Below are positions 4,171-60,871 of a stretch of DNA of 64,000 bases, piece by piece. The notes under the pieces were generated by a model that did no database searches, was not told the DNA's origin, and saw only the letters and a program-made list of their open reading frames with translations. Every line of letters starts with the position of its first letter. The first letter of the stretch is position 1. The position numbers were made by a program, and so were the translations under genes. Origin of the DNA: Heteronotia binoei (taxonomy: Eukaryota); the NCBI RefSeq assembly GCF_032191835.1, contig NC_083226.1:9796001-9860000 (forward strand). Direction: 5' to 3'.

Positions 4171-4173
4171 ACC

Positions 4174-18994: not shown

Positions 18995-19019
18995 ATGGAA
19001 TCCTATAGTTTACTTTCAC
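18995..19019 (+). CDS. Predicted 25-nt coding exon 1 of OR-c (MESYSLLS+)
   Basis: ggaATGGAATCC...TCAC|GTAAGC; splices in frame to acceptor 22338-22339 (25+11 = 36 nt). Confidence 0.65.
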
Positions 19020-20489
19020 GTAAGCATTCTGTTTTATACATTCCTTCATGGTTCATTAATATCGTGTCAGTTTCAACAGTTTTATATGAATCTCTAGCAG
19101 AAAGCCTCTCTCTCGATGTCATAGATGAATCTCAAGCAGAAAGGCACTCTTTACCCTCTGATTCAAAAGCTCAATGGCAGAATAACTGCTTTGCATGCAA
19201 AAGGTTTCAGCTTCCGTTTCTGGCATCATCCATTAAAACTATCTCAATGAGAAAGACTTCCACAAAGGACTTGGGAGAAGGGCTGCAGCACTTTGGAACA
19301 GACAAGGGTCAATAGATCAATGAACTGATTTGAAGATAGATTTTGCGTGCTTTGGGCAACTGTTAACATTGTTAGGCAGATCTCTGGTTAACAGTCCGGA
19401 ATGTTCAGCTAATGCCTCTTTGAGGGCATCCAACGGTCAAGAGAAGATTTCCTAGGTAGGGAATCTGAATTATATAGCCACAAGACTCTGAAGAGTGTGG
19501 CTTCTTTGCGCAGCTCAAGCAACAGGAACAGTTGGGTGTGCGAAGAGGCAACAGTACACAGCTCTTGAAGAAACAAGGGAGAAGGAAATTGATGTTGTGA
19601 GTCAGAGAGGGTGTTTCATTCAGGTGTTAGCTGGAACTGGATTTGCGGTTTGGTGGGGCTGTTCAAGCAGTTCCCAGGGCAATCTATTGGCCTGCAGAAG
19701 TGCCTGTTTGCCTCCGCTCATGTTTTGTTTGTACATGTATACATAAAGCACATATAATAAAGTTAACGTAGGTGTCCAGTGCTCAGACTTCCAGTGGAGA
19801 CACATCCCCCAGGCACTGACCAGAATGTTCCTCACTAGACACAGAAGAAAGGAGTGTGTCATAAGATTAACAGCGCAGGGTTAAACAGTCATTTATTTCT
19901 TCAGAATACTTGACTGCTGATGTGCAATATAATTGTCCTTAACATAGTTTAATAATGGTGATGGTGATGGTGTTTGTGAGACATATAAAATATGGAGTAA
20001 GTTACTTTATAGAAGAGAACGTTAAGAAATTCTGCTAGTGATTACTGTTTCTTTCCACTCAGAATCTCGAAGTCTCTATCATGAGAAATGATGGTATTCA
20101 TACAAGATCTCTATTGACCCTCAACTCACATACCTGACCTGTTGTCCTTATATTTGCACAGAGAACAAGGTCATCCCAAAATCTTGTTTTGGGATTAATT
20201 AATAAACACCTCTTAGAGATGCAGACTTTTCCCTTGAGGTAATCAGCACAGCAGTCTAAGAACACCGCACAAGGACATTAGTATTACTAAGCTATGGATG
20301 GAGATTTTTTTTACAACATGGGTTTTCAAAAAAGATTATTCAAGGTTCTAGAAATGGAGTTTATGTTATACAGACAATCTAATTAGGAATAGACTATCTT
20401 AATTTCCCACTTGTCTCATTTGGTCAAATAAAATGGAACATAATTCACACTAGACATATTGTATATAAACACTGCCATATAGTTCAAGG

Positions 20490-20795
20490 TAAGGGTGGCC
20501 AGTGGGGATGAGGGGTAGAGTTGTGGGATCCAGGTTGGGAAACCCCTGGAGACTGTGGAATGGAGCCTGGGGGGGGGCAGATATTATTTCTGTTGCACAC
20601 TGGGTTTAGAGGCTGAAGACTTTTTCAGTCAGAGTGATCATAAGAAGTGCAGTTTAAGAGAGTTGATTCAGACTACACAATGCCATAAAGTCCACCCTCC
20701 AAAACATCCATTTTCTCCAGGGGAACTAATCTTTGTAGTCAGGAGATCATTATAATTCCAGGAGATCTCTAGGCTCCACCCGGAGGTTGGCAACC
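20490..20795. mobile_element. hAT-type MITE
   Basis: aagggtggccag...ggttggcaacc termini; body shared with ~49525-49680. Confidence 0.6.
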
Positions 20796-20799
20796 ACAC

Positions 20800-21010
20800 A
20801 TATCATTGATATCATTATGTGCTCATTTAAATTATTGCATGTAGGACAAATGAGCAGATCTTTGAGGAATAGGATTTCAAAATACAGACACAGGGTTCAA
20901 ACTGGATTTGTGGAGACTCTGCTTCCGGGTCATTTTAAATATATATTTTTTTATATCACTCACTCTGATTTGGGGTTAGGAGTAAAAATGATACAAAATT
21001 CTGTATGTAA
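20800..21010 (+). mobile_element. Degenerate Penelope-like GIY-YIG endonuclease remnant
   Basis: IIMCSFKLLHVGQMSRSLRNRISKYRHRVQTG...LPGHF resembles the YIGQT.R.L..RI.EH...HF pattern. Confidence 0.5.
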
Positions 21011-21812
21011 ATAACAGGCGCTTCTAAGACAAACGGTGTTTGGCTCTATATTTTCTGAAAACCACATTCCCTCGTGGACTAGATGATAAAATGGATAGGT
21101 TAGCTTTTTTGGAGGCTACAAGGGGAGTTAGAATGATTTAAACATGGTAGGGTATTTTGTATTATAAATGTAACAGCTGCAATTTAACCTTAGGATGGTT
21201 AGGCAATTGCCTTTTTATGTGCATAATAAAACAGCAGCACATTTCTTTAAAAGAGTCCTGATTCCTCATGCGTAAAGCAAGATGGGAGGATCTCTCTTCA
21301 TAAGTGGCCTTTTCCAGGAACCAGCCACATCCAGTAAGTACGATTTATACCCACTCCCTCAGCTTCTGGTTACTGAATCTATTCCAACAGAGGCCAGAGG
21401 TAGGCATTAGGCATGGTGTGGGCTCTGATATCAATTATAAGCGGCTTGGGAAAATTTAAATTTTCTTAATAGTTTTTTTTTCTTTTTCTTTTATTGTGCC
21501 TAGCCATGATTAGAGAACAGGAACTGAGGGGTACCCAGAACAGTTTCTTCCATCCTCAAGATTCATGAGGTAATTTTCCACCCTCCCTCTTTTGGAGTAA
21601 ATGTACATGTTAAAAAGAGTCATTAATGTATTGTTAATATACCTTATTTTTAGTTGTTTGACAGGTTCTTTGTTGTTCTGTTAGTTTAGAGTGAGCCCAA
21701 TGTATAAGCAAAGGCCTTCTAAATTTGTCAACAAATAACATGGACATTTAATGATTACACTATCAAATCTGATGACAGTCTCAAAATGAGTTTTTGAGCA
21801 GAAGAACTCACA

Positions 21813-22078
21813 GGCCGTTTTCCCACTAAGCTTACCTCGGAGCGACGTCCCTCTTCACCGCGCAGCATCTGTGCAGATTTCCCACCAACTGCTCCGAGGA
21901 ACCAGGAAGTTCCCGACCTTTTGCGTCGCAAATGGAAACTGCTAAAAACCAGTTTACGTTAGCGACGCAAAAGCCGCGACTCTACTTGGTTACTCGGAGC
22001 AGTTGGTGGGAAATCCGCGCAGACACTGCGCGGTGAAGAGGGACGTCGTTCCGAGGTAAGCTCAGTGGGAAAACGGCC
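21813..22078. mobile_element. Palindromic MITE (PIF/Harbinger-like), 266 bp
   Basis: TIR ggccgttttcccact / agtgggaaaacggcc, 3-bp TSD ACA, self-complementary body. Confidence 0.8.
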
Positions 22079-22350
22079 ACAGTGTACTTTGTCATGGCCT
22101 GTTATTTATGTATATTTGACATACTTCTATTATTAGGGCTAGGACAGGAAGAAGCTGGCACAACATTTATGAGTGCAATTTCTCCCAAAAATTTCCCCAT
22201 AAAGTCTCAGTTAATCAGCACTATCACAAATGTGTCTTTCATTTATTATTAAAATCTAAAACCATCTTATAATTTATGAATAATGATTATCAAATCAGAA
22301 GTGGGCTAAAAAAATTTGTACGTCATGATTTCTTTGCAGATTCCAGATCA

Positions 22351-23295
22351 ATGGACCGTGAGAATCAAAGTGTGGTGACAGAATTCATCCTGATTGGATT
22401 TTCCAGTTTCCCCAACTTGCAAGTCCTACTCTTTCTGGTGTTTTCCATCACATACTTGGCCATTTTGGCTGGAAATAGCATCATTGTCACAACAATAAGG
22501 TGCGACTCCAGTCTCCACATCCCCATGTATTTCTTCCTTGCCATGCTCTCCAGTTCAGAAATCTGCTACACGTTTACCATTGTCCCCAATATGCTTGTAA
22601 ATCTTCTAAAAGAAAAGGCAACTATTTCATCCATTGGCTGTGCTACTCAGATGTGCCTATTTCTGGCCCTTGCAGGTACAAACTGTATGCTTCTCACCGT
22701 GATGGGGTTTGATCGCTATGTGTCCATATGCAAACCTTTACATTACCCGGTTCTAATGAATCAGAGAACTTGTACTGAACTGGTAATCTTTTCAGCAACA
22801 ACTGGTTTTCTTTTTGCTGTACTCATGACAATCCTCATATTTACCTTGCCCTTCTGTGGGCCAAATAAAATCCATCACTTCTTTTGTGATTTGGCACCTT
22901 TACTTCAGCTGGCCTGCGCTCGAAATTATATGGGGGAAATTGTCATTTTTCTTATTTGCATTTTAATGGTAGTGGTCTCATTTTTTCTGATCCTCCTTTC
23001 ATATATTTTAATCTTAAACACAATCCTGAAAATCCCCAATGCAGAGGGCAAACGCAAAGCCTTTTCGACTTGTGCCTCCCATCTGATTGTGGTCGTTGTG
23101 CACTTTGGATGTGCTTCTGTTATTTACCTGAGGCCCCAATCCAGATACACTTTGAATGAGGACATGTTTATCTCTGTCACGTACACGCTGGTGACTCCAT
23201 TGCTGAATCCTGTCGTTTACAGCCTGAGGAACAAGGATGTCCAAGTAGCACTCAAGAAATCCCTGGGCAGAAGCACTTGCACCTGGAAGATATAA
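22351..23295 (+). CDS. Olfactory receptor, class II, OR10-family-like (OR-c), main exon 314 aa (326 aa if spliced to 18995-19019)
   Basis: OR motifs; MDRENQS start aligns with paralogues. The track's upstream Met (22276) reads through the acceptor tttctttgcAG. Confidence 0.95.
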   Translation: MDRENQSVVTEFILIGFSSFPNLQVLLFLVFSITYLAILAGNSIIVTTIRCDSSLHIPMYFFLAMLSSSEICYTFTIVPNMLVNLLKEKATISSIGCATQMCLFLALAGTNCMLLTVMGFDRYVSICKPLHYPVLMNQRTCTELVIFSATTGFLFAVLMTILIFTLPFCGPNKIHHFFCDLAPLLQLACARNYMGEIVIFLICILMVVVSFFLILLSYILILNTILKIPNAEGKRKAFSTCASHLIVVVVHFGCASVIYLRPQSRYTLNEDMFISVTYTLVTPLLNPVVYSLRNKDVQVALKKSLGRSTCTWKI

Positions 23296-30569: not shown

Positions 30570-30717
30570 GGTGACAATGTTAGGGCTAATGAGTTTTGTA
30601 TGATGAAATACCAAAGAAATGATTTCCTTAGGGATTTGGAAGCTTGCTTGCAATGCTGCATGCTTTATAAAAGCCACATAAAAAGGAGGCTATTGTGACA
30701 AATTGCTCTCCATTGGA
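30570..30717 (+). promoter_or_regulatory. Putative OR-d promoter block (homeodomain TAATGA, EBF-like, TATA-like)
   Basis: ggcTAATGAg at ~30575, TCCTTAGGGA 30625-30634, tttataaaag ~30664; homologous to the other four blocks. Confidence 0.45.
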
Positions 30718-30742
30718 ATGGAATCCGACAGTCTGTCTCCAC
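30718..30742 (+). CDS. Predicted 25-nt coding exon 1 of OR-d (MESDSLSP+)
   Basis: ggaATGGAATCC...CCAC|GTAAGC; in frame with acceptor 37217-37218 plus the 11-nt leader. Confidence 0.65.
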
Positions 30743-31058
30743 GTAAGCATTCTGCTTTACATATTACCTCTTGACCCATAAATGCATTCTGAGTTTCAGT
30801 AGTGTTTTAAAAAGGCACTCACTCTATAGGCTTTCTAGATTGAAGTTAAAAGCGCCTAGCCCTTGCGCACAACAAGTTCCCGCGTTTATTTCTGACACCA
30901 TCAGTTAGAAAGTTCTCAAGTAGCAGGGCTGAGAAAGACCACCGCAGATGACTTGAGAGAACTGTGGAGGATTTTGGAAAAGACAGTAGACAAGAGATCA
31001 ATGGACTGACTTAAGGATGAATTCAGAGTGCTTTGGGCAACCATTGATTTGTTCAGCA

Positions 31059-33085
31059 GAGAGCCAGTTTGGTGTAGTGGTTAAGTGTACAGACTCTTAT
31101 CTGGGAGAACCAGCTTTGATTCCCCACTCCTCCACTTGCAGCTGCTGGAATGGCCTTAGGTCAGCCATAGCCCTGGCAGAGGTTGTCCTTGAAAGGGCAG
31201 CTGCTGTGAAAGTCCTCTCAGCCCCACCCACCTCACAGGGTGCCTGTTGTGGGGGAGGAAGGGAGAGGAGATTGTGAGCCACTCTGAGACTCTGTCCTTG
31301 AAAGGGCAGCTGCTGTGAGAGCCCTCTCCAGCCCCACCGACCTCACAGGGTGTCTGTTGTGGGGGAGGAAGGTGAAGGAGATTGTAGGCCATTCTGAGAC
31401 TCTGTCCTTGAAAGAGCAGCTGCTGTGAGAGCCCTCTCAGCCCCACCCACCTCACAGGGTGTCTGCTGTGGGGGGGGGGAGGTAAAGGAGATTATAGGCC
31501 GCTCTGAGACTCTGTCCTTGAAAGGGCAGCTGCTGTGAGAGCCCTCTCAGCCCCACCCACCTCACAGGGTGTCTGTTGTGGGGGAGGAAGGTAAGGGAGA
31601 TTGTAGGTCGCTCTGAGACTCTGTCCTTGAAGGGGCAGCTGCTGTGAGAGCCCTCTCCAGCCCCACCAACCTCACAGGGTGTCTGTTGTTGGGGAGGAAT
31701 GGAAAGGAGATTGTAGGCCGCTCTGAGACTCTGTCCTTGAAAGGGCAGCTGCTGTGAGAGCCCTCTCAGCCCCACTGACCTCACAGGGTGTCTGTTGTGG
31801 GGGGGGAAGGTAAAGGAGATTGTAGGCCGCTTTGAGACTCTGTCCTTGAAAGGGCAGCTGCTGTGAGAGCCCTCTCAGCCCCACCCACCTCACAGGGTGT
31901 CTGCTGTGGGGGGGGAAGGTAAAGGAGATTATAGGCCGCTCTGAGACTCTGTCCTTGAAAGGGCAGCTGCTGTGAGAGCCCTCTCAGCCCCACCGACCTC
32001 ACAGGGTGTCTGTTGTGGGGGAGGAAGGTAAAGGAGATTGTAGGCCGCTCTGAGACTCTGTCCTTGAAAGGGCAGCTGCTGTGAGAGCCCTCTCAGCCCC
32101 ACCCACCTCACAGCGTGTCTGTTGTGGGGGAGGAAGGTAAAGGAGATTGTAGGCTGCTGTGAGACTCTGTCCTTGAAAGGGCAGCTGCTGTGAGAGCCCT
32201 CTCAGCCCCACCCACCTCACAGCGTGTCTGTTGTGGGGGAGGAAGGTAAAGGAGATTGTAGGCCGCTCTGAGACTCTGTCCTTGAAGGGGCAGCTGCTGT
32301 GAGAGCCCTCTCAGCCCCACCCACCTCACAGCATGTCTGTTGTGGGGGAGGAAGGTAAAGGAGATTGTAGGCTGCTGTGAGACTCTGTCCTTGAAAGGGC
32401 AGCTGCTGTGAGAGCCCTCTCAACCCCACCAACCTCATAGGGTGCCTGTTGTGGGGGAGGAAGGTAAAGGAGATTGTGAGCCGCTCTGAGACTCTGTCCT
32501 TGAAAGGGCAGCTGCTGTGAGAGCCCTATCAGCCCCACCCACCTCATAGGGTGTCTGTTGCGGGGAAGGAAGGTAAAGGAGATTGTGAGCCGCTCTGAGA
32601 CTCTGTCCTTGAAAGGGCAGCTGCTGTGAGAGCCCTATCAGCCCCACCTACCTCACAGGGTGTCTGTTGTGGGGGAGGAAGGTAAAGGAGATTGTAGGCC
32701 ACTCTGAGATTCTGTCCTTGAAAAGGCAGCTGCTGTGAGAGCCCTCTTAGCCCCTCCCACCTCACAGGGTGTCTGTTGTGGGGGAGGAAGGTAAAAGAGA
32801 TTGTAGGCCTCTGTGAGGCTCTGTCCTTGAAAGGGCAGCTGCTGTGAGAGCCCTCTTAGCCCCTCCCACCTCACAGGGTGTCTGTTTTGGGGGAGGAAGG
32901 GAAAGGAGATTGTAGGCCTCTGTGAGGCTCTGTCCTTGAAAGGGCAGCTGCTGTGAGAGCCCTCTCAGCCCCGCCTACCTCACAGGGTGTCTGTTGTAGG
33001 GGAGGAAGGGAAAGGAGATTGTGAGCCGCTGTGAGACTCTTCAAAGTGGACGGCGGGATATATATCCAATATCTTCTTCTTCTTC
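31059..33085 (+). repeat. tRNA-derived SINE with internal ~109-bp minisatellite (~17 units)
   Basis: Single SINE head (ggtgtagtggttaag...ttgattcccc) and single tail (ggatatatatccaatatcttcttcttc) bracket 17 gtccttgaa-containing units; the ORF track shows 109-bp periodicity. Confidence 0.92.
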
Positions 33086-33236
33086 AAATCTCTGGTTAAT
33101 AGTCCAGATTATGACAGGAGATGATTTCCATTGTGGGGCATCTCAGTGCATTTGAATTATATACGCATTGGGATCTTGAAGATGGTGAGATCCATGCTTA
33201 GCTGAAGGCGAAGTACTATGTGTGATTTTTAAAAAG

Positions 33237-33508
33237 GGCCGATTTCGCACTCACCTTTCGCCACTCTCACGTCCGTCTTCTCAGCGCAGCATCCTCCCAA
33301 TTTCCCCGCTGTTTTCATCAGGGCTGCCGCAAACATTGCCGTTTTCGCACAGCAAAGGGAAACTGGTTTTTAGCGGTTTCAATTTGCTGCGTGAAAACTG
33401 CGTCCACAATGTTTGCTGCAGCCCTGGCGCAAATAGTGGGAAATCGGGAGGACGCCGCGTTGCGAAGACGAATGTGGGAACGGCGTAAGGGTGAATGAGA
33501 AATCGGTC
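33237..33508. mobile_element. Palindromic MITE (PIF/Harbinger-like)
   Basis: TIR ggccgatttcgc / gagaaatcggtc, 3-bp TSD AAG. Confidence 0.75.
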
Positions 33509-34059
33509 AAGAAGGTCACAGTTCTGAGGGATCAAGTGGAGAGGGAGAAAGATATAAAGGGAGTGAGGGTTATTTGGGAAAGAGTTATTCTGGCCCTGCG
33601 GCACTGGGTACAACCCACGTTGTCCTCATGGCAATCTTCTGCATGCAGAAGTGCCTTTTAATCTCCGCTTACATTTTTCTTTGCCTGTGCATAAGCAAAG
33701 CACATATAACAAAGGTTATCATAAAGCTGCAGTGCTCAGTCCTCTAAAAGGAACAAAACCTGCCGACAATGACCCACTAGACAGGGAAACATGGCATGCC
33801 ACGCTATGGGCTCTACAATAGTCATTTGTTTGCAGCATTTCCACGGTGATTTGCTACCATAATGGCTCTTCCATGACTTCACAACATAAATCAACAATGC
33901 TAACGCTTGTAAGCCATATTAAATATGGAACAAGCGTTTTGCAGAAGAGAACTTCAAGCAAGCCTACTAGTGGTGCCCAGTGGAGAGTTCTGTTCCTTCC
34001 AAATTATAACCAAAATCAAAGGTTTCAGGTTTTCACGGCTGGTAACATCATTAGGGTTT

Positions 34060-34256
34060 GTAGAATCTTTCGGGCTCAAGTGCCGTGTTCTACGGGAGAA
34101 AGTTTTCCTTCCAGACGTTTCGTTCTCAGCTGCGGAGAACATCCTCAGTGGCGTTGCAGCCGGAGCAGGCGCTCTGACCTTCTTGGCTGCTGTGCGTTGA
34201 GTGGGGCCTCCAGCCTAGAAATAGCAGCTCTCCAGCAGCCCTGGCCCCACTCAACA
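34060..34256 (-). mobile_element. Penelope-like terminal-repeat fragment with a short inverted 5' segment
   Basis: 34060-34208 is the reverse complement of ~41140-41290; 34209-34255 matches 41104-41149 in direct orientation. Confidence 0.75.
34111..34151 (-). ncRNA. Minimal type I hammerhead ribozyme, intact core, GUC cleavage triplet
   Basis: Minus strand: cca CTGAGGA t gttctc cgcagct gagaac GAAA cg T C tgg. Confidence 0.8.
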
Positions 34257-34284
34257 CCTTGGAGGAGTCATCTGTGATTTTGGA

Positions 34285-35130
34285 ATAGGGCATCTTCAAT
34301 ATGCTGATGACACCCAGCTGTGAACCGCTGCCTGCCAGCTGCAGTGGAAAGATTATGTGAGTAAAGAAACAAACTGAATCCTGACAAGATGGCGGTGGTG
34401 TAGGCTGGGAAGGCCAAGAACCTGAAGGACACGATGCTTCCCCCCCACCACTTTTGATGAGGTCCAGTTGACTCTCGTTGACTCAGTTAATTGCCTCAGA
34501 ATGACACTTAATCCCAGCTTTGTTGCTGGAGAAGCAAGCTAATGCAGTCACAAAAGAGGCATTCTGTCAGCTCAGCTCAGGACCCTCAGTTTGGCTGATC
34601 TGGCCACATGGAGCCATGCTCCGGTTACCCAGGCCAGATTACTGTACCCTCCAGTCGGTACAGAGAGCCATAACTTGGGTAATGTCAGGTGCAAAACAGA
34701 ATCTGGATATCATTCCTATTCTGCAGATGTTGCATTGGTTGCTGATCAGGGACTGGGTTCGATTCAAGATCCCAGTCTTCACCTGCAAGGCCCTTCATGC
34801 CCTCGTAGGACTACCCACCCTCCCACTGTGTTCTGCTACAACAGCTCCTCTTTTTCAAAAAAGTGCCGCCTTGAAAACAGGTAAAATTGGCAAGTCTGAG
34901 GTGGGTCCCTCACGGACTGGTCTGCCTTCTTCTGTCTTCGCCCTCTTCTATCACTGCAAAATGTGCAAAATGGAATTCTTCAGGAAGCCATTCTGGCAGA
35001 GAAAGCCCAGCTGTGACACAAAGGATCAGCTCGGGAGGTGACCTCTATTCGAGAGAACATTTTTGTCCACTGTTTCGTTGCTGTATTTTTGCTCCCATTG
35101 CCCCCCCGCCCCAATTGTTCAATTACTTGA
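34285..35130 (+). mobile_element. Degenerate L2 LINE RT/3' fragment
   Basis: catcttcaatatgctgatgacacccagct (YADDTQL) and LQMLHWLLIRDWVRFKIPVFTCKALH. Confidence 0.75.
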
Positions 35131-35184
35131 AAATTTTGCTGTTAGATTCAGATGTTATCAGATTTTGTAATGGGCTTGCTGACT

Positions 35185-36308
35185 GAATCGTTTTTGGTGT
35201 AGTGGTTATTTGTGCGGACTCTTATCTGGGAGAACTGGGTTTGATTCCCCACTCCTCCACTTGCAGCTGCTGGGATGGCCTTGGGTCAGCCATAGCTCTG
35301 GCAGAGGCTGTCCTTGAAAGGGCAGCTGCTGTGAGAGCCCTCTCCAGCCCCACCCACCTCACAGGGTGTCTGTTGTGGGGGAGGAAGGGAAAAGAGATTG
35401 TAGGCTGCTCTGAGACTCTGTCCTTGAAGGGGCAGCTGCTGTGAGAGCCCTCTCCAGCCCCACCCACCTCACAGGGTATCTGTTGTGGGGGAGGAAGGGA
35501 AAGGAGATTGTAGGCTGCTCTGAGACTCTGTCCTTGAAAGGGCAGCTACTGTGAGAGCCCTCACCTCACAGGGTGTCTGTTGTGGGGGAGGAAGGTAAAG
35601 GAGATTGTGAGCCACTCTGAGACTCTGTCCTTGAAAGGGCAGCTACTGTGAGAGCCCTCTCCATCCCCACCCACCCCTCAGGGTGTCTGTTGTGGGGGAG
35701 GAAGGTAAAGGAGATTGTGAGCCGCTCTGAGACTCTGTCCTTGAAAGGGCAACTGCTGTGAGAGCCCTCTCAGCCTCACCCACCTCACAGGATTTCTATT
35801 GTAGGGGAGGGAGATAAAGGAGATTGTAAGCAGCTCTGAGACTCTGTCCTTGAAAGGGCAGCTGCTATGAGAGCCTTCTCAGCCCCGCCCACCTCACAGG
35901 GCGCCTGTTGTGGGGGAGGAAGGGAAAGGAGATTGTGAGCCGCTCTGAGACTCTTCGGAGTGGAGGGCGGGATATAAATCCAATATCTTCATCTACCTCA
36001 CAGGGTGTCTGTTGTGGGGGAGGAAGGTAAAGGAGATTGTGAGCCGCTCTGAGACTCTTCGGAGTGGAGGGCGGGATATAAATCCAATATCTTCATTTAC
36101 CTCACAGGTTGTGGGGGAGGAAGGGAAAGGAGATTGTGAGCCCCTCTGAGACTCTTCGGAGTGGAGGGTGGGATATAAATCCAATATCTTCTTCTACCTC
36201 ACAGGGTGCCTGTTGTGGGGGAGGAAGGTAAAGGAGATTGTGAGCCGCTCTGAGACTCTTCGAAGTGGAGGGCGGGATATAAATTCAATATCTTCTTCTT
36301 CTTCTTCT
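35185..36308 (+). repeat. Same tRNA-SINE with ~6 internal units followed by ~4 tail-containing units
   Basis: Head at 35185; gtccttgaa units to ~35950; ctcttcggagtggagggcgggatataaat repeated at ~35952, 36056, 36152 and 36257. Confidence 0.88.
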
Positions 36309-36500
36309 GATGCTGGGAAAGACAGAAGGCAAAAGAAGAAGGTGACAGCAAAAGATGAGATGGCTGGACAGTGTTACTGATGTAACAAACATGAATTTGA
36401 GCAGATTTCGGAGAATGGTGGAAGACAGGAGGGCCTGGCGTGACTTTGTTCATGGGGTCACAAAGAGTTGGACTCGACTGTGTGACTGAACAACAACAAA
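36309..36500 (+). mobile_element. RTE-BovB LINE 3' end
   Basis: MLGKTEGKRRR..QKMRWLDSVTDVTNMNLSRFRRMVEDRRAWRDFVHGVTKSWTRLCD* followed by a (CAA)n tail. Confidence 0.85.
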
Positions 36501-37025: not shown

Positions 37026-37229
37026 AATCAGAGGTGTGCACTTGGATATACCTGGGGAAGCCACAAGCTTCAGAAAGCCAAGGGCGTTGCCAACTTTCCT
37101 GGAAAATGGGTAAGTGCCACTTCTGGAAATCATGCTCAGAAAAGCCAGACTGATTATCATGAATATAAGGTTCCTGTTGACGGGAACTGTCGATAAGAGT
37201 ATAATCGTTTCGTTCCAGGCTCTACAACA

Positions 37230-47951: not shown

Positions 47952-47980
47952 ATCCCAGTCCTACAGCATGCGGTATACTC

Positions 47981-48160: not shown

Positions 48161-48394
48161 AGTGCCGCCCACTGCCCAACAAATAGGGTAGGCTTTGGCG
48201 TTCCAGATACCAGGCACATTAGAAAGCAACAAGCCTGCTGCGTGCCTAATTGCCTGTCACTGGGGACAGCAACTGATCAGAGGGGTCTGTCCAACACGGG
48301 GGGGGGGGGGGTCTGCTTCAACACAACTGTTGATGTGATGGAGGGGAGGGATTTCTTCACCATCTTTCTGACTCCTCAAAGAACTTGTTATGTC

Positions 48395-49281
48395 AGCTCT
48401 CATTGACACTGTAATGGCTAATGAGTGTAACCTCTCAAATGCAATAGAGATAATATCCCAGAGGATTTAGAAACTTGTTTACAGTGTTTCGTGCTTTGTA
48501 AATGCCATATAAAAGCAGGGTATTGTGGCAAAATTCTGTCCTTTGGAATGGAATCCAACAGCTCACCTCCACGTAAGAAATCTGTTTTCTATATTCCTTC
48601 TTGATTCAAAAATGATGTGGCCTCTGTTTCACTAGTGGTTTGTATGAATGTCATGCCAAAAGGCACTCTATACGCTTGGTAGCTGAATACTTCCCTTGCA
48701 TGCAAAAGGCTCCAGCTTCTTTTCCTGGCACCATCAGTTCAGAGAGCTCTTAATTAGTGGGGCTGAGAAGACCTCCACAAACGACTTAGGAGAACTGCTG
48801 CAGCAGTCTGGAATAGACAACATTCAGAGGATGGATTCTTATTCAAAGACAGATTCAGAGAGGATCTCAGGTTAATAGTCCAAAATGGCAGGAGATGATT
48901 TCCTAATGCATTCAGTCTTGGGCCATTCAGGGCTGCCCAGAGCCACTGTGGGCCCCAGGACAGAGATTCCATCTGCCTCCTTTGACCCTGATCCAAAATC
49001 AAAAGCATAACATATTGAATTTCTAGGCTTCCTCATACTGTGACCATTGATGTCTCCATGTGTCCATGGCACCTTTCAGATGTGGGCATGACAACCATGT
49101 CCTCTTAGGATGCAGATGTCTGACCACCAGAGCAAAAGCAGGAAGAGATATCTTCAGACTCCCTTAGTGATATGTCTTCTGGATCAACATCATAAGCTCA
49201 TTCATTTTACTTTTTTTGCCACTGAGTTGGTACCTTATCATCACCATGAATTAATAAGCTGTCACTCCAAAGAGAGGCATT
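48395..49281 (+). repeat. ~99% identical duplicated non-coding tract (partner 56930-57815) containing the OR promoter and exon 1
   Basis: Manual alignment: 8 substitutions and 1 homopolymer indel in ~886 bp. Confidence 0.95.
48548..48572 (+). CDS. Predicted 25-nt coding exon 1 of OR-e (MESNSSPP+)
   Basis: ggaATGGAATCC...CCAC|GTAAGA; upstream TAATGA (~48419), TCCCAGAGGA (48456) and catataaaag (~48506); in frame with acceptor 51204-51205. Confidence 0.65.
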
Positions 49282-49819
49282 TTGGCTCTACACTTTGGAT
49301 TCTCTGCACCCAAAGGTCTTCAGTGATTGTTTATATCAGGGCATCTGCCTGACCTTCTGTGGTGCCTTCAGTTGTCCCTGATTGTCTAGCACCGCAACTC
49401 ACAACAGAGTTAGTGAGGGAAGGCCAAATGAAACAAAGAAGCCTTCATCCATTGGTGGAAGACAACGATAATACATCCGTCTCCTTGGGGAGGGAGTTCC
49501 AAGGCCCCTTTCTTGGGTTCCCTCTAGGCTTGCTAACCTCCCAGTGGGGCCTGGAGATCTCCCAAAATTGCAACTGATTTCCAGACTACAGAGATCAGCT
49601 CTCCTGGAGGAAATGGGTGCTTCGGAGGGTGGACTCTATGGCATTATACCCCACTGAGGTCCCTCCCCAAACCCCACAACATAATATCATTATATTGGTA
49701 TAATTTTATAACAAACACATGCACCAAAATTTCTGAATTTTAATTCCCCCCCCGCAAACTATGTCTCTATCCCCTTCTGTTGCAGATATATCTAAACATC
49801 TTTATAAATGAATTGAATT

Positions 49820-50745
49820 AAAAATAGAGGGAATGTTTATTAAATTTGCCGATGATACTAAATTGTGAGGAGTTGTGAATACAGTAGAAGACAGAGACAG
49901 GTTTCAGGACGATCTTGACAGGCTGGAAAACTGGGCTGAAACCAATAAAATGAATTTTAACAGGGATAAATGTAAAGTTCTGCATTTAGGTAATAAAAAT
50001 CCCTTGTTTGATTATAGGATAGGGGAGACTTGTCTTAGCAGTAGCCTGTGTGAAAAGGATGTAAGGGTCTTTGTGGACCATATGCTGAGCATGAGTCAAC
50101 AGCGTGATGTGGTGGCTAAAAAGGCAAATGCAATTTTGGGCTGTATCAACAGAAGTATAGTGTCCAGATCACATTAAGTGATAATGGTATTGGTTTACTC
50201 TGCTCTGGTAAGACCTCACCTGGAGTATTGTGTTCAGTTTTGGACACCACATTTTAAGAAAGATATAGACAAGCTGGAACGGGTCCAGAGGAGGGTGACG
50301 AAGATGGTGAGGGGTCTGGAGACCAAGTCCTATGAAGACTTGAAGGAGCTGGGCATGTTTAGCCTGGAGAGGAGGTAGCTGATAGGTGATATGATCACCA
50401 TCTTCAAGTACTTGAAGGGTTGTCATATAGAGGATGGTGCAGAATTATTTTCTGTGGCCCCAGGAGGTAGGACCAGAACCAATGGGTTGTGATTAAATCA
50501 AAAGAGTTTCTGTCTCAACATTAGGAAGAACTTCCTGACAGTCAGAGCGATTCCTCAGTGGAACAGGCTTCCCCAAGAGGTGGTGGGCTCTCCTTCCTTG
50601 GAGGTTTTAAAGCAGAGGCCAGATGGCCATCTGACAGCAATGAAGATCCTGTGAATTTAGGAGGAGGTATTTGTGAGTTTCCTGCATTGTGCAGGGGGTT
50701 GGACTAGATGACCCTGGGGTCCCTTGCAAGTCTATGATTCTAGAG
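49820..50745 (+). mobile_element. CR1 LINE RT C-terminus and 3' UTR
   Basis: aaatttgccgatgatactaaattg (KFADDTKL), [13 protein letters not shown], tatgattctag tail. Confidence 0.9.
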
Positions 50746-51216
50746 TCTAACTATATTAAATATGGATTAGTATAGTGAAGAAATTCTAGAAAAATTACTT
50801 AGTGATTCCTATTTCTATTCAGAAGAGTTTTCAGGAGAACCTCTAAATGTCCAGCATCTGAAATGACATTGCTATTCCCAGGTGTCCTCTCCAGACCTTT
50901 CCTCCCTGCCACTGATGTGCTGTTCTTGTGAGACCCAGCTCATCCCCAAAAACCAGCTGGTGGGATGATTTAATAAAGCAACACTTAGAAATCAGATACT
51001 TTGCCTTTGAGGTCCTTTGCAGTGAGTGCCACGTGGATTTCTCCTTGCTGAAATGTTATTGCCAAAAAAACCCAGCTCTTCTCCCACGCTGAGTAGGCGG
51101 GAAAGAAATTGTGAGTGCAATGCTCCCCCAAAATGATTGTATGAAGTGTCAATTAATTCTCAAATACAAATTAATGTATTTGTCAGTGTAATAGTTTCTT
51201 TGCAGATTCCAGACCA

Positions 51217-52161
51217 ATGGGCCATGAGAATCAAAGTGTGGTGATGGAATTCATCTTCATAGGATTTTCCAGTTTCCCAGACTTGCAAGTCCTGCTGTTT
51301 GTGGTCTTCTCCCTCATGTACTTGGCCATTTTGGCTGGGAATATCATCATCATCGCAACAATAAAGTGTGACTCCAGCCTCCACAACCCCATGTACTTCT
51401 TCTTGGCCATCCTTTCTGGTTCAGAAATCTGCTACACAATCACCATCATCCCCAATATGCTTGTAAATCTTCTAAGAGAAAAGGCAACTATTTCCTTCAT
51501 TGGTTGTGCTGTCCAGATGTGTTTGTTCCTGGGCTTTGCTTGCACAGACTGCATGCTTCTCACAGTGATGGGGTATGACCGATATGTGTCCATATGTAAA
51601 CCTTTACATTATCCAGTTCTGATGAATCCGAGATTTTGCACTAAACTGGTGGTCTTCTCAGTATCGACTGGTTTTCTCTTTTCTACAGTGGAGACATATT
51701 TTATATTTACCTTGCCATTCTGTGGGCCGGATAAAATCAATCACTTCTTTTGTGATTTAGCACCTTTACTTGAGTTGGCTTGTGGCCGAAATTATATAGG
51801 GGAAATTGTCATTTTTGTCATTTGTTTCTTGGTGGTAGTTTTCTCATTCCTTCTGGTCATTCTCTCGTATCTTTTAATCTTAAACACAATCCTGAAAATC
51901 CCCACAACAGAGGGCAAGCGCAAAGCCTTTTCAACTTGTGCCTCTCACCTCATTGTGGTGGTTGTGCACTTTGTTTGTGCTTCCATTATTTACCTGAGAC
52001 CTCAGTCCAGGTACACTTTGAATGAGGACACCTTGATCTCCGTCACATACACCCTGGTGACCCCACTGCTGAATCCTGTTGTTTATACCTTGAGGAACAA
52101 GGATGTCCGAGTAGCACTCAAGAAATCTCTGGGCAGGAGCACATGCGTCTGGAAGATTTAA
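51217..52161 (+). CDS. Olfactory receptor, class II, OR10-family-like (OR-e), main exon 314 aa (326 aa if spliced)
   Basis: OR motifs; acceptor tttctttgcAG 51204-51205. Confidence 0.95.
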   Translation: MGHENQSVVMEFIFIGFSSFPDLQVLLFVVFSLMYLAILAGNIIIIATIKCDSSLHNPMYFFLAILSGSEICYTITIIPNMLVNLLREKATISFIGCAVQMCLFLGFACTDCMLLTVMGYDRYVSICKPLHYPVLMNPRFCTKLVVFSVSTGFLFSTVETYFIFTLPFCGPDKINHFFCDLAPLLELACGRNYIGEIVIFVICFLVVVFSFLLVILSYLLILNTILKIPTTEGKRKAFSTCASHLIVVVVHFVCASIIYLRPQSRYTLNEDTLISVTYTLVTPLLNPVVYTLRNKDVRVALKKSLGRSTCVWKI

Positions 52162-56700: not shown

Positions 56701-56717
56701 CTGGCACCATGTTCTAA

Positions 56718-57815
56718 TATTCATCTTAATCCTGGATTCCTTGGAATTCCATCTTTGCTGCCAAATTCCTCTCTTCCAAGGATAGTGTGTCTCTTATCCT
56801 ATGTTAGTGTCACCACCATCAAAGGGTCCATAGCCTCATGGATGACTTGGGGAAAGTCTGGGGTATCCCAGCCAGGGGTGGAATTCTAGCAGGAGCTCCT
56901 TTGCATATTAGGTTGCACACCCCTGATGTAGCTCTCATTGACACTGTAATGGCTAATGAGTGTAACCTCTCAAATACAATAGAGATAATATCCCAGAGGA
57001 TTTAGAAACTTGTTTACAGTGTTTCGTGCTTTGTAAATGCCATATAAAAGAAGGGTATTGTGGCAAAATTCTGTCCTTTGGAATGGAATCCAACAGCTCA
57101 CCTCCACGTAAGAAATCTGTTTTCTATATTCCTTCTTGATTCAAAAATGATGTGGCCTCTGTTTCACTAGTGGTTTGTATGAATGTCATGCCAAAAGGCA
57201 CTCTATATGCTTGGTAGCTGAATACTTCCCTTGCATGCAAAAGGCTCCAGCTTCTTTTCCTGGCACCATCAGTTCAGAGAGCTCTTAATTAGTGGGGCTG
57301 AGAAGACCTCCACAAATGACTTAGGAGAACTGCCGCAGCAGTCTGGAATAGACAACATTCAGAAGATGGATTCTTATTCAAAGACAGATTCAGAGAGGAT
57401 CTCAGGTTAATAGTCCAGAATGGCAGGAGATGATTTCCTAATGCATTCAGTCTTGGGCCATTCAGGGCTGCCCAGAGCCACTGTGGGCCCCAGGACAGAG
57501 ATTCCATCTGCCTCCTTTGACCCTGATCCAAAATCAAAAGCATAACATATTGAATTTCTAGGCTTCCTCATACTGTGACCATTGATGTCTCCATGTGTCC
57601 ATGGCACCTTTCAGATGTGGGCATGACAACCATGTCCTCTTAGGATGCAGATGTCTGACCACCAGAGCAAAAGCAGGAAGAGATATCTTCAGACTCCTTT
57701 AGTGATATGTCTTCTGGATCAACATCATAAGCTCATTCATTTTACTTTTTTGCCACTGAGTTGGTACCTTATCATCACCATGAATTAATAAGCTGTCACT
57801 CCAAAGAGAGGCATT
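56718..57815 (+). repeat. Duplicated copy of 47627-49281 lacking ~47840-48394
   Basis: 56718-56930 is ~95% identical to 47627-47839; it then jumps at AGC microhomology into the ~99% identical tract. Confidence 0.92.
57083..57107 (+). CDS. Predicted 25-nt coding exon 1 of OR-f (MESNSSPP+)
   Basis: Identical to 48548-48572; donor GTAAGA at 57108; in frame with acceptor 59914-59915. Confidence 0.62.
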
Positions 57816-58393
57816 ATGATTATAGGATAGAGGAGACTTGCCTGGGTGGTAGTCTGTGTGAAAAGGATGTAGGGGTCTTAGTGGACCATACGCTGAACAT
57901 GAGTCAACAGTGTGATGTGGTGGCTAAAAAGGCAAATGCAATTTTGGGCTGTATCAACAGAAGTATAGTGTCCAGATCACATGAAGTGATGATGGTATCG
58001 CTTTACTCTGCTCTGGTAAGACCTCACCTGGAGTATTGTGTTCAGTTTTGGACACCACATTTTAAGAAGGATATAGACAAGCTGGAACGGGTCCAGAGGA
58101 GGGCAACGAAGATGGTGAGGGGTCTGGAGACCAAGTCCTATGAGGAAAGGCTGAAGGAGCTGGGCATGTTTAGCTAGGAGAGGAGGTTGCTGAGAGGTGA
58201 TATGATCACCATCTTCAAGTACTTGAAGGGTTGTCCTATAGAAGATGGTGTGGAATTGTTTTCTGTGACCCCAGGAGGTAGGACCAGAACCAATGGGTTG
58301 CGATTAAATCAAAAGAGTTTCCGGCTCAACATTAGAAAGAACTTCCTGACAGTCAGAGCAGTTCCTCAGTGGAATAGGCTTCCTCGGGAGGTT
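57816..58393 (+). mobile_element. CR1 LINE 3' fragment
   Basis: [39 protein letters not shown]. Confidence 0.9.
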
Positions 58394-58514
58394 TGAGATT
58401 GGGGCCTGTCTGTGGGCAAGGAAATGTTTGCCCCACAGCACTCATGAAAGAGAACCGTCATTATTGCTGATGATGTATTGAATGTTTTTGAGTTTAGAGT
58501 GGTACGTAACCTAG

Positions 58515-58885
58515 ACAACATGATCACTGGACCTAAAAATATCAGCTACACCATCTCAGGCTCATTTAGTTGTTCATTTTCTAACATTGTATATGCCATT
58601 AAATGCCAACAATACCCTTCAGTTCTCTACATAGGGCAAAGTGGTCACACTCTACGCCTAAACGGGCACAAATCTGATATAAAAAAACACAAAACTGAGA
58701 AACCTGTAGAACATTTCAGCCTCCTAGGACATTCAGTTCGGGACCTCGGAGTAGCTGTTTTATTGAAAAAGGAATTTCAGAAAGATTAGAATGAGAGATT
58801 GCTGAATTACAATACTCATGACAATGGAACCCCCCCCCCCGGGGCTTAAAAGAAATACTGGGTTCTTATCTCACTTCGCATGCTA
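58515..58885 (+). mobile_element. Penelope-like GIY-YIG endonuclease C-terminal fragment
   Basis: ITGPKNISYTISGSFSCSFSNIVYAIKCQQYPSVLYIGQSG..L...GHKSDIKKHKTEKPV.HFSL.GHSV.DL.VAVL. Confidence 0.85.
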
Positions 58886-59104
58886 AGTCACTCAGTTCTC
58901 ACATCTGCTCATTAACTCTTTTATTATCTGCAAGCTAATGTGCTGCTATTCACAGGTCTTGCTGACTGCATTAATCCAATCTTAGCTACACTCATTGCTC
59001 AAATCAAATGGACAGCTCTACGGCACCATGGGAGGCATATTTATACTTATTAAATTAAAACCTTATTAAATCTAATTAAAATGAGTTTTATCTATATTTT
59101 AAAT

Positions 59105-59470
59105 ATTATAATAATTACATATAAATTGATGACCTCTTTGTAATATTTTTATCCAAACATGGAGTTTGTCAACAGGGGGAATGCCACATGTTCATACATT
59201 CAATTTGGTCCTTGTTATAAATTGAACAATATTCCATTTTGGGATGTTCGGATATATAAAAATAATTCGTGTGATCTGACGTCAGACCTTGGGTTAAATA
59301 AGCCAGCTGTTGAAAAAGAATAAAAATCATTCCAGGATAAAATTGAAGGGCATTTAAACCTATGGACAGGAAGGCATTGGAACAATTATTACATTGGAAG
59401 AATTATTATCAAATATATCTTTTAAAAGAATTTACCTTGCAATCAGCTTTTATGGCTGCAAAGTAAGTAT
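59105..59470 (+). mobile_element. Very degenerate Penelope-like RT remnant
   Basis: IDDLFVIF, NIPFWDVRIYK...L.SDL, KNLPCNQLL. Confidence 0.45.
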
Positions 59471-59926
59471 AAGTGGGGGAAATGTTCCCAACATAAAGTA
59501 GTGGTTCTCAATCAACAGCTCCTGGAGAGCCATTCCAGGGATTTCCATCAACCAAAAGAGCTACATTTACTTCCATTCGAGGCATGAGGACTATATCTTA
59601 GGGATGTTCACAGCTTAGCCATTCCTTAACAGTGGATACTCAGGTTGGTAATCATCTGCTAGCCACAAGGTCTAACACGCAAGAGACTTGCCCATTTGCC
59701 AGAAACATGGGGCTGGCACCACAAAGGGCAACAGTTTTTTTCTCTTTTGTTTAATTTAAATGTTTATTGATTTTCAGGCAACAGTTTTCTGAAGAGTTAC
59801 TGGTAGTATGTCCGAGAACCACAAATGTCTCTCAAGCTACGAGAATCACTGGTATAAAGTATCAGTTGACAGGCACTGTTTCAATTTTGTAAGAGTCTAA
59901 TAGGTTTCATTCCAGATGCTACATCA

Positions 59927-60871
59927 ATGGAACAAGGAAATCAAAGCATGGTGACAGAATTCATCTTGATTGGATTTTCCAGTTTCCCAGACCTGCAGGT
60001 CCCTCTGTTTGTGGTGTTCTCCATCATGTACTTGGCCATTTTGGCTGGAAATATCATCATTATTGCTACAATAAGGCGCGAGTCCAGCCTCCACATCCCC
60101 ATGTATTTCTTCCTTGCCATGCTCTCCAGTTCAGAAACCTGCTACACTTGCACCATCATCCCCAATATGCTTGTAAATCTTCTAAAAGAGAAAGCAACTA
60201 TTTCATTCATCGGTTGCACTGTTCAGATGTATACATTCTTGGGCTTTGCATGTACAAATTGTCTGCTTCTCGTAGTGATGGGATATGACCGATATGCTTG
60301 CATATGTAAACCTTTACGTTATCCAGTTTTGATGGATCAGAGACTCTGTACTAAACTGGTGGTCTTTTCAGCAATAGGTGGTTTTTTAATTTCAGAAATC
60401 TATTCATTTTCTGTGTTTTCCTTGCCGTACTGTGGACCAAATAAAATAAATCATTTCCTTTGTGATATAGCACCTTTGCTTGAGCTGGCCTGTGCCCGAA
60501 ATTATATAGGAGAAATTCTCATTTTTCTTTTTTCTTTTTTAGTGATAGTTTTCTCATTTCTCCTGATCCTCCTTTCATATATTCTAATCTTAAATACAGT
60601 CCTGAAAATCCCCACAGCAGAGGGCAAGCGCAAGGCCTTTTCAACTTGCTCCTCTCATCTCATTGTTGTGGTTGTGCATTTTGGATGTGCTTCCATTGTT
60701 TACCTGAGGCCCCGATCCAGAAACGCTTTGAATGAGGACATGTTTATCTCTGTCACATACACCCTGGTGACTCCATTGCTGAATCCTGTCGTTTACAGCC
60801 TGAGGAACAAGGATGTCCAAGCAGCACTCAAAAAATCCCTGGGCAGAAGCGCATGTGAACGGAAGATGTGA
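59927..60871 (+). CDS. Olfactory receptor, class II, OR10-family-like (OR-f), main exon 314 aa (326 aa if spliced)
   Basis: OR motifs (NQS, PMYFFL, MGYDRY, KAFSTCSSHL, PLLNPVVYSLRN); acceptor tttcattccAG 59914-59915. Confidence 0.95.
   Translation: MEQGNQSMVTEFILIGFSSFPDLQVPLFVVFSIMYLAILAGNIIIIATIRRESSLHIPMYFFLAMLSSSETCYTCTIIPNMLVNLLKEKATISFIGCTVQMYTFLGFACTNCLLLVVMGYDRYACICKPLRYPVLMDQRLCTKLVVFSAIGGFLISEIYSFSVFSLPYCGPNKINHFLCDIAPLLELACARNYIGEILIFLFSFLVIVFSFLLILLSYILILNTVLKIPTAEGKRKAFSTCSSHLIVVVVHFGCASIVYLRPRSRNALNEDMFISVTYTLVTPLLNPVVYSLRNKDVQAALKKSLGRSACERKM

What the first reader, a model, noticed from the sequence alone, without database searches (positions are those of the whole stretch)
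18995..59929. Olfactory receptors with a split CDS: conserved 25-nt coding mini-exon adds 12 aa
Four exons (18995-19019, 30718-30742, 48548-48572, 57083-57107) each start ggaATGGAATCC (strong Kozak, -3 G and +4 G), are exactly 25 nt and end C|GTAAG. All six ORs have an acceptor exactly 11 nt before the annotated ATG. 25+11 = 36 nt, in frame and stop-free in OR-c to OR-f: MESYSLLSHSRS-, MESDSLSPRSTT-, MESNSSPPHSRP-, MESNSSPPHATS-. Predicted phase-1 introns are 3320, 6476, 2633 and 2808 bp. The internal ATGs mostly have a pyrimidine at -3. OR-e/f would gain a second sequon (NSS). Vertebrate OR CDSs are canonically intronless and split cases are known only for a minority of mammalian ORs, so a whole reptile subfamily would be missed by ORF-based annotation.
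Basis: partly seen in the sequence, partly recalled or inferred. Interest (0 to 1): 0.88.

Follow-up and report, generated by a model that had tools for sequence, protein, structure and literature searches.

The report
Upstream start codon in gecko ORs
Four neighbouring smell-receptor genes of a gecko carry a conserved extra start codon in their short first exon that, after splicing, would add 12 amino acids to the receptor's outer tail; some mammalian receptors are known to do this, several gecko genera share it, but no RNA data could be obtained to confirm it.

Summary
Four exact ATGGAATCC-N16-GTAAG elements lie 2.6-6.5 kb upstream of four of six tandem OR10R2-like genes of Heteronotia binoei. 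Every gene has an acceptor 11 nt before its usual ATG, and 25+11 nt is in frame.

The elements are the 3' ends of first (leader) exons. An O/E-like site sits at about -93 and a TATA-like box at about -40.

Fourteen such leaders were found in Heteronotia, Paroedura, Gekko and Sphaerodactylus. All keep the ATG, a purine at -3, G at +4, exactly 25 nt and GTAAG, while neighbouring bases vary freely. Paralogues and outgroups share the promoter and the 11-nt spacing but have no ATG and leaders of 19-27 nt.

Inside the ATG-bearing lineages the ancestral start was replaced four times (ACA, GTG, ACG, GTG) in ORFs that are otherwise intact. One NCBI Paroedura model (326 aa) already uses the same split.

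The coding reading is therefore well supported by comparison. It is unproven at the RNA and protein level: no usable runs were found. The peptide itself is poorly conserved. The usual ATG is probably still used as well.

This is a gecko-specific case of the split OR genes described in mammals, not a new kind of feature.

The parts
18865..18994 (+). Promoter of OR-c: O/E-like site at -93 and TATA-like box at about -37 relative to the leader ATG
18995..19019 (+). OR-c leader exon, coding part (MESYSLLS + 1 nt), followed by the donor GTAAG
19020..22339 (+). OR-c predicted phase-1 intron, 3320 nt
22340..23295 (+). OR-c exon 2: 11 nt plus a 314-codon OR ORF with its usual ATG at 22351. The mechanical ORF from 22276 reads through intron sequence.
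30588..30717 (+). Promoter of OR-d: O/E-like site at -93 and a TATA-like box
30718..30742 (+). OR-d leader exon, coding part (MESDSLSP + 1 nt), followed by the donor GTAAG
30743..37218 (+). OR-d predicted phase-1 intron, 6476 nt
37219..38174 (+). OR-d exon 2: 11 nt plus a 314-codon ORF (ATG at 37230)
48418..48547 (+). Promoter of OR-e: TAAT and O/E-like site at -97/-92, TATAAAA at -40
48548..48572 (+). OR-e leader exon, coding part (MESNSSPP + 1 nt), followed by the donor GTAAG
48573..51205 (+). OR-e predicted phase-1 intron, 2633 nt. It contains an interspersed repeat at about 49480-50790.
51206..52161 (+). OR-e exon 2: 11 nt plus a 314-codon ORF (ATG at 51217)
56953..57082 (+). Promoter of OR-f. 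It is part of the 895-bp block that is 98.8% identical to the OR-e copy.
57083..57107 (+). OR-f leader exon, coding part, identical to that of OR-e
57108..59915 (+). OR-f predicted phase-1 intron, 2808 nt
59916..60871 (+). OR-f exon 2: 11 nt (beginning with an out-of-frame ATG) plus a 314-codon ORF (ATG at 59927)
13635..13660 (+). Diverged, non-coding homologue of the leader upstream of OR-b: no ATG, 26 nt, and GT changed to GG at the homologous donor
14823..15772 (+). OR-b exon 2: 11 nt ending in TAA, then a 312-codon ORF. No extension is possible.
5001..5950 (+). OR-a exon 2: 11 nt ending in TAA, then a 312-codon ORF. No leader was found in the 5 kb of window upstream.

Best explanation
Each element is the 3' part of the first exon of an OR10R2-like olfactory receptor gene of the gecko Heteronotia binoei. 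An OR-type promoter, with an O/E-like site at about -93 and a TATA-like box at about -40, should start transcription roughly 10 nt before a strong-context AUG. Twenty-five nt after that AUG the exon is spliced (GTAAG donor, phase 1) to the acceptor 11 nt upstream of the ancestral start. The first AUG of the mRNA is then in frame, and translation from it gives a receptor with 12 extra, Ser/Pro-rich, non-hydrophobic residues on its extracellular N-terminus.

The leader exon, the promoter and the 11-nt spacing are old and shared with lacertids and anguids. The AUG and the 25-nt length arose once inside geckos, before Gekkonidae and Sphaerodactylidae split. Since then the ancestral AUG has become partly dispensable and has been replaced at least four times.

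Because the predicted 5'UTR is very short and the ancestral AUG is still kept in most genes, both starts are probably used, by leaky scanning. The extension's sequence is only loosely constrained.

Shown: the sequence architecture and its conservation. Inferred: the transcription start, the splice, and use of the upstream AUG.
For: - Four exact copies in the window against 0.6 expected by chance.
- Fourteen ATG-bearing leaders in Heteronotia, Paroedura, Gekko and Sphaerodactylus are all exactly 25 nt to GTAAG, with a purine at -3 and G at +4. All eleven that have a downstream OR in the locus are in frame.
- Among 12 distinct copies the ATG and the GTAAG never vary. The 16 nt upstream vary in 15 of 16 columns, and codons 4-8 in 14 of 16.
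- Leaders without an ATG in paralogues and outgroups are 19, 19, 26, 26, 26 and 27 nt long.
- On the CDS tree the leader state needs only one change.
- The usual ATG is ACA in the Paroedura orthologue of OR-c, GTG in a Gekko gene, ACG in Sphaerodactylus genes and GTG in a second Paroedura gene. All are 313-314-codon intact ORFs within ATG-leader lineages. Their pairwise dN/dS of 0.19-0.34 matches their neighbours.
- NCBI's 326-aa Paroedura model P0013 starts at the homologous ATG with the same 25+11 split. Another gene call starts at the leader ATG at L009:19696.
- O/E-like and TATA-like boxes keep fixed distances.
- Mammalian precedent: Barnes et al. 2020, PMC7055050.
Against: - There is no transcript, TSS or protein evidence. 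No RNA run was listed for OR-c, and the three runs listed for OR-e hit only an intronic repeat.
- The TATA position predicts a 5'UTR of about 10 nt, which is poor for AUG recognition.
- Codons 4-8 show no third-position bias, and the intron start and promoter are as conserved as, or more conserved than, the exon body. The peptide itself is therefore barely constrained.
- The open frame is uninformative.
- One Paroedura leader keeps the ATG, the 25 nt and the donor but has an in-frame TAA at codon 4.
- One ATG-less Paroedura gene also has its leader donor changed to GG, so it may simply be dying.
- Sphaerodactylus genes have a replacement ATG inside the 11 nt, so they do not depend on the leader.
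- GTG and ACG are near-cognate starts.
- Loss of the ATG only in the ATG-leader clade (4 of about 12 against 0 of about 8) is not statistically significant.
Confidence: 0.65

Rival explanations
1. The leader is functionally non-coding. ATGGAATCC is conserved as a core-promoter or transcription-start element. The AUG is either not in the mRNA or too close to the cap to be recognised, and translation starts at the usual internal AUG. Orthologues without that AUG are young pseudogenes, use near-cognate starts, or use other upstream exons.
For: - The whole block from about -130 to +55 is conserved, not only the exon.
- The TATA-like box at about -40 places the predicted start about 10 nt from the ATG.
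- The exon body evolves without codon-position bias.
- One leader carries an in-frame TAA but is otherwise kept.
- One ATG-less gene has also lost the leader donor.
- NCBI annotates all six window genes without an extension.
- Barnes et al. report in-frame uATGs in 13.6% of human and 21.5% of mouse ORs, so they are common.
Against: - The three ATG bases are invariant in 12 distinct copies, while 15 of the 16 bases just upstream vary.
- The length is fixed at 25 nt only where the ATG exists.
- The Paroedura ACA gene has no near-cognate start or other in-frame ATG before TM1. It keeps 314 intact codons with dN/dS 0.19 against its Heteronotia orthologue.
- The replacement exon that Gnomon chose for it (10001-10019 of L002) has no conserved donor in Heteronotia.
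Confidence: 0.25
2. The leader is spliced, but not directly to the 11-nt acceptor. One or more unrecognised internal 5' exons are normally included, so the 25+11 arithmetic does not describe the real mRNA.
For: Mammalian OR genes often have several alternatively spliced 5' exons (Barnes et al. 2020). The introns here are 2.6-6.5 kb and were not examined with RNA.
Against: Conservation of exactly 25 nt and of the ATG across four genera would then be unexplained. No conserved block other than the leader was found between leader and CDS when the e and f regions or the other leader regions were compared.
Confidence: 0.07
3. The pattern is a chance resemblance among recent duplicates with no constraint.
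For: The e and f copies are one recent duplication or conversion tract, 98.8% identical over 895 bp.
Against: Copies c, d and e are only about 72% identical in the flanks, yet they keep ATG, length and donor. So do copies in three other genera, including another family.
Confidence: 0.02

Closest known systems
Mammalian 'split' OR genes (Barnes et al. 2020, BMC Genomics 21:196, PMC7055050)
   Same: The initiation Met lies in the exon upstream of the main OR exon. The intron falls in the extracellular N-terminal region and is a few kb long. The Met and the junction are conserved in orthologues or paralogues. Some loci lacking the usual ATG had been taken for pseudogenes. Some genes have two isoforms that differ by 3-15 N-terminal residues.
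   Different: This case is in a squamate, in one gecko-specific clade of OR10R2/10T2-like genes with a single origin. The upstream coding part is only 25 nt and sits in the first exon about 10 nt from the predicted cap. The four window genes keep a conserved downstream Met, a class that Barnes et al. deliberately excluded. There is no RNA-seq support here, whereas theirs rests on RNA-seq.
Ordinary OR gene structure: non-coding 5' leader exon(s) behind an O/E plus homeodomain-type promoter, spliced just upstream of a single coding exon
   Same: An O/E-like site lies at about -93. TAAT motifs are present in some copies. There is a short first exon, an intron of several kb, and an acceptor a few nt before the ATG. 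OR-a and OR-b, Eublepharis, Elgaria and Podarcis fit this ordinary pattern.
   Different: In the c-f clade the leader carries an invariant, strong-context, in-frame AUG and a fixed length.
Multi-exon OR genes of cichlid fishes (Azzouzi et al. 2014, cited in PMC10869828)
   Same: They are OR coding sequences interrupted by introns.
   Different: That paper was known here only as a reference and was not read. It concerns a different vertebrate class and OR families. No relationship was tested.
NCBI Gnomon model 'olfactory receptor 10R2-like' of Paroedura picta, 326 aa (P0013)
   Same: It has the same homologous leader ATG, 25+11 nt and a 12-aa extension, MASYSLSPHAPR.
   Different: It is an automatic prediction for a single gene. 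Its neighbours with the same leader are annotated at 314 aa or given unrelated first exons.

Membership tests
Vertebrate class II olfactory receptors, family 10 (OR10R/T/K-like) | 7TM OR fold/profile (Pfam 7tm_4) and closest relatives named OR10R2/10T2/10K2-like | tested here: met
   Precomputed PF13853 and PF00001 on the window's own proteins. The best hits, at 73-92% identity, are all OR10R2/T2/K2-like proteins of geckos and other squamates.
Split OR genes in the sense of Barnes et al. 2020 | Intact full-length ORF across two exons with canonical GT..AG | tested here: met
   25 nt + 11 nt + a 314-codon ORF, GTAAG donors and cag acceptors, with no stop, in OR-c to OR-f.
Split OR genes in the sense of Barnes et al. 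2020 | Initiation Met and splice junction conserved in orthologues or closest paralogues | tested here: met
   Fourteen leaders in four gecko genera keep the ATG, the 25 nt and GTAAG. The 11-nt acceptor spacing is kept in all squamate loci examined.
Split OR genes in the sense of Barnes et al. 2020 | Transcript (RNA-seq) evidence for the upstream exon and the junction | not testable with these tools
   No RNA run was listed for OR-c. The three runs listed for OR-e are metatranscriptome contigs that cover only an intronic repeat.
Split OR genes in the sense of Barnes et al. 2020 | No conserved downstream Met that gives a normal-length single-exon ORF (their stringent filter) | tested here: not met
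   All four window genes keep the usual ATG. The filter is met only by orthologues: Paroedura L002:10140 (ACA), Gekko L005:13932 (GTG) and Paroedura L010:18873 (GTG).
OR promoter / first exon | O/E-like site and TATA/initiator region within about 100 nt upstream of the exon, conserved among paralogues | tested here: met
   TCCYNNRGGR at -92 to -98 in 9 of the 14 ATG-bearing leaders scanned, and also in 2 of the 4 non-ATG leaders scanned. A TATA-like box at -36 to -43 in most copies. That these motifs act as a promoter is an inference.

The most novel reading that the evidence does not exclude
A start codon was born in the 5' leader exon of one gecko OR10 lineage. This happened before the Gekkonidae-Sphaerodactylidae split, roughly 100 My ago by general knowledge. 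It has been kept in frame ever since and has taken over from the ancestral start, which then decayed independently at least three or four times. This would be a datable, replicated example of start-codon migration across an intron in a chemoreceptor family. ORF-only OR censuses would then misclassify functional gecko ORs as pseudogenes or truncated genes.
Probability: 0.55. Interest if true: 0.55.

Novelty: new member of a known kind. Interest (0 to 1): 0.45.

Why it matters
OR repertoires of non-mammals are counted almost entirely from single-exon ORFs; Policarpo et al. 2024, for example, looks for extra exons only where no ORF is found. If the leader AUG is used, a clade of gecko ORs has a longer N-terminal ectodomain than annotated, with a second N-glycosylation sequon in OR-e and OR-f. 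Members that lost the internal ATG would also be functional genes, not pseudogenes.

The locus is also a clean natural series for studying how a 5'UTR AUG becomes a start codon. It contains the ancestral non-coding state (OR-a and OR-b, Eublepharis, lacertids), the dual-AUG state (OR-c to OR-f) and the takeover state (Paroedura ACA, Gekko GTG).

OR surface expression in heterologous cells is notoriously sensitive to N-terminal tags (general knowledge). A natural extension is therefore worth testing for an effect on trafficking.

Tried and rejected
- RNA evidence. The look-up of sequencing runs on OR-e listed only three metatranscriptome runs with 6-7% of the sampled words. Laying them showed contigs only on an interspersed repeat at about 49480-50790, none on the leader, junction or CDS. 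No run was listed for OR-c. This says nothing about expression.
- Stop-codon test.
- Codon-position test on codons 4-8. There is no third-position excess, so no evidence of purifying selection on the peptide.
- Protein search restricted to residues 1-40 of P0013, meant to find other annotated extensions. It returned only P0013 itself.
- Alligator locus. No homologous leader was found, and the acceptor is not at 11 nt.
- Logan protein P0036, with 8 extra N-terminal residues. Its extra residues back-translate to a pyrimidine tract and a cag acceptor, so I judged it a genomic read-through, not a transcript. This was judged from the protein sequence only and not followed up.
- OR-a leader. None was found in window 1-5011.
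- Earlier-findings index. Nothing for this place or these words.
- Literature. No paper on split OR coding regions in geckos or squamates was found in the library.
- ATG loss by clade. Restriction of the loss to the ATG-leader clade was considered as a statistical argument. It was dropped because the counts are too small (roughly 4 of 12 against 0 of 8).


Full report
**What is in the window**

The window comes from a chromosome of the gecko Heteronotia binoei (Gekkonidae). The window's own proteins sit on a 186.7-Mb contig together with a named H. binoei protein.

The window holds six intact, tandem, + strand olfactory receptor ORFs of 312-314 codons. I call them a to f, with usual ATGs at 5012, 14834, 22351, 37230, 51217 and 59927. 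Their closest relatives are annotated OR10R2/10T2/10K2-like and carry the 7tm_4 profile. NCBI annotates all six without any N-terminal extension.

**The observation**

The pattern ATGGAATCC-N16-GTAAG occurs four times, all on the + strand and without mismatch, at 18995, 30718, 48548 and 57083. Dinucleotide-preserving shuffles give 0.6 matches even when two mismatches are allowed.

All six ORs have cag| exactly 11 nt before the usual ATG. The intron lengths (3320, 6476, 2633, 2808 nt) are also as stated. In OR-a and OR-b the 11 nt end in TAA, so nothing can be read through.

Two qualifications apply:
- The e and f leaders lie in an 895-bp block that is 98.8% identical, although their coding exons are only 82% identical. 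They are therefore one observation, produced by recent conversion or duplication.
- The 36 nt are C/T-rich and nearly free of stops in all three frames. 'Stop-free' therefore proves nothing.

**What the elements are**

The 25 nt are embedded in a longer conserved block, about 130 nt upstream and about 55 nt downstream. Upstream there is an O/E-like site (TCCYNNRGGR) at -92 to -98 in most copies, and a TATA-like box at -36 to -43.

That is the layout expected of an OR promoter (general knowledge). It implies that the element is the end of the first exon, with transcription starting roughly 10 nt before the ATG. This start site is an inference; no TSS data exist here.

A fifth, diverged homologue lies upstream of OR-b at about 13635. 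It has the promoter but no ATG, is 26 nt long, and has GG instead of GT at the homologous donor.

**Related loci**

Using proteins found with OR-e, I fetched 12 loci from seven other species. They cover the geckos Paroedura picta, Gekko japonicus, Sphaerodactylus townsendi and Eublepharis macularius, the lizards Elgaria and Podarcis, and Alligator.

ATG-bearing leaders:
- There are fourteen: Heteronotia 4, Paroedura 5, Sphaerodactylus 3 and Gekko 2.
- All have exactly 25 nt from ATG to GTAAG, a purine at -3 and G at +4.
- All eleven that can be paired with a downstream OR in the locus are in frame through the 11 nt.
- Among 12 distinct copies the ATG and GTAAG are invariant. By contrast, 15 of the 16 bases just upstream and 14 of the 16 bases of codons 4-8 vary.

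Leaders without an ATG, which otherwise share the promoter:

| Leader | Length |
|---|---|
| OR-b | 26 nt |
| Eublepharis | 26 nt |
| Paroedura L012 (two copies) | 26 nt |
| Elgaria | 19 nt |
| Podarcis | 19 and 27 nt |

The 11-nt acceptor spacing is kept in every squamate locus but not in Alligator.

On a maximum-likelihood tree of 22 coding exons the leader state needs a single change. The outgroups are in the no-ATG state, but the gecko backbone is poorly resolved. The simplest history is therefore an old non-coding leader that acquired an ATG and the 25-nt length once within geckos, before Gekkonidae and Sphaerodactylidae diverged.

**Loss of the ancestral start**

The strongest argument for use of the leader AUG is that the usual ATG has been replaced in ORFs that are otherwise intact (313-314 codons), and only in ATG-leader lineages:
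- ACA in the Paroedura orthologue of OR-c (L002:10140; leader at 8163).
- GTG in Gekko (L005:13932; leader at 7805).
- ACG in Sphaerodactylus (L003:10007; three annotated paralogues begin MLT...).
- GTG in Paroedura L010:18873.

Pairwise dN/dS for these genes is 0.19-0.34, the same as for their neighbours.

The ACA case is the cleanest, because ACA is not a near-cognate start and the next Met lies in TM1. For that gene, and for the Gekko and second Paroedura genes, the automatic annotation invented unrelated short first exons. The one in L002 has no conserved donor at the homologous place in Heteronotia.

In contrast, NCBI's 326-aa Paroedura model P0013 uses exactly the homologous ATG and the 25+11 split. 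Another gene call starts at the leader ATG at L009:19696.

**Evidence that limits the claim**

- No transcript evidence could be obtained.
- The peptide is barely constrained. Codons 4-8 show no codon-position bias, and the intron start is better conserved than the exon body.
- One Paroedura leader (L002:17641) keeps ATG, length and donor but has TAA as codon 4.
- The second GTG gene of Paroedura also has GG at its leader donor and may be dying.
- Sphaerodactylus genes carry a new in-frame ATG inside the 11 nt and do not depend on the leader.
- GTG and ACG can initiate weakly (general knowledge).
- The internal ATG is still kept in most genes of the clade, although codons 2-4 next to it vary freely. 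Together with the very short predicted 5'UTR, this suggests that both AUGs are used, by leaky scanning. That is an inference.
- The internal ATG's pyrimidine at -3 is ancestral and is also found where it is the only start. It is therefore no argument against its use.

**Comparison with what is known**

Barnes et al. [quoted passage not shown] In most, the intron falls in the N-terminal region. The Met and junction are conserved, and some loci had previously been called pseudogenes for lack of an ATG. The authors explicitly set aside cases where a conserved downstream Met gives a normal single-exon ORF. They also report in-frame uATGs in 13.6% of human and 21.5% of mouse ORs.

The four window genes belong to that set-aside class. 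Their ATG-less orthologues belong to the accepted class. Policarpo et al. 2024 mine ORs as single-exon genes and look for further exons only where no ORF is found. I found no paper describing this in squamates.

**Verdict**

It is also overstated in novelty, because the kind is known and one public model exists.

I put 0.65 on the leader AUG being used to make an extended receptor, probably alongside the shorter form. I put 0.25 on a purely non-coding leader whose ATG-containing motif is conserved for regulatory reasons.

Noticed in passing
window 48390-49284 and 56926-57818 (also 47626-47839 vs 56718-56932): The promoter, leader exon and 5' intron of OR-e and OR-f are 98.8% identical over 895 bp, while the coding exons are only 82% identical and are not sisters on the tree. 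This points to recent gene conversion or a segmental copy that covers only the 5' part of the gene.
   Followed up: partly
window 47975-48202 (+): An OR fragment corresponding to residues 71-149, at 62% identity, lies about 350 bp upstream of the OR-e leader. It is a relic of a broken OR copy next to the duplicated block.
   Followed up: no
window 8929-12209 (-) and 44200-45264 (-): Long ORFs carry reverse transcriptase, RNase H, integrase and Tf2-type SH3 domains. These are pieces of Ty3/gypsy-like LTR retrotransposons lying between the OR genes.
   Followed up: partly
window about 49480-50790 (intron of OR-e): An interspersed repeat is matched at 90-99% by thousands of contigs in three metatranscriptome runs. 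It is the only part of the stretch those runs cover.
   Followed up: partly
window 59916-59918; also L001:13454, L005:13921, L007:9990, L009:9990: In OR-f and many orthologues exon 2 begins with ATG (cag|ATGC...). This ATG is out of frame with the receptor and opens a short uORF that overlaps the usual start. Translation from the in-frame leader AUG would read straight through it, which may have favoured the new start.
   Followed up: no
window 22276-22350: The mechanical ORF of OR-c extends 25 codons upstream of the usual ATG into intron sequence (ATG at 22276). This is a trap for ORF-based annotation.
   Followed up: yes
L002:10001-10019, L005:10001-10004, L010:10001 onward: NCBI models for three gecko ORs that lack the usual ATG (P0014, P0026, P0027) start in short upstream exons unrelated to the conserved leader. 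The conserved leader with an in-frame ATG lies elsewhere in each locus (L002:8163, L005:7805, L010:~15017).
   Followed up: partly
window 19020-19075, 30743-30798, 48573-48628, 57108-57163 and the gecko loci: The first ~55 nt of intron 1 are conserved across gecko genera as well as or better than the exon body. No function is known; it could be a downstream promoter or splicing element.
   Followed up: no
L003:15298-16254: A second Sphaerodactylus OR with ACG at the usual start has a premature stop after 72 codons. Two leaders (13151 and 14573) lie upstream of it.
   Followed up: no
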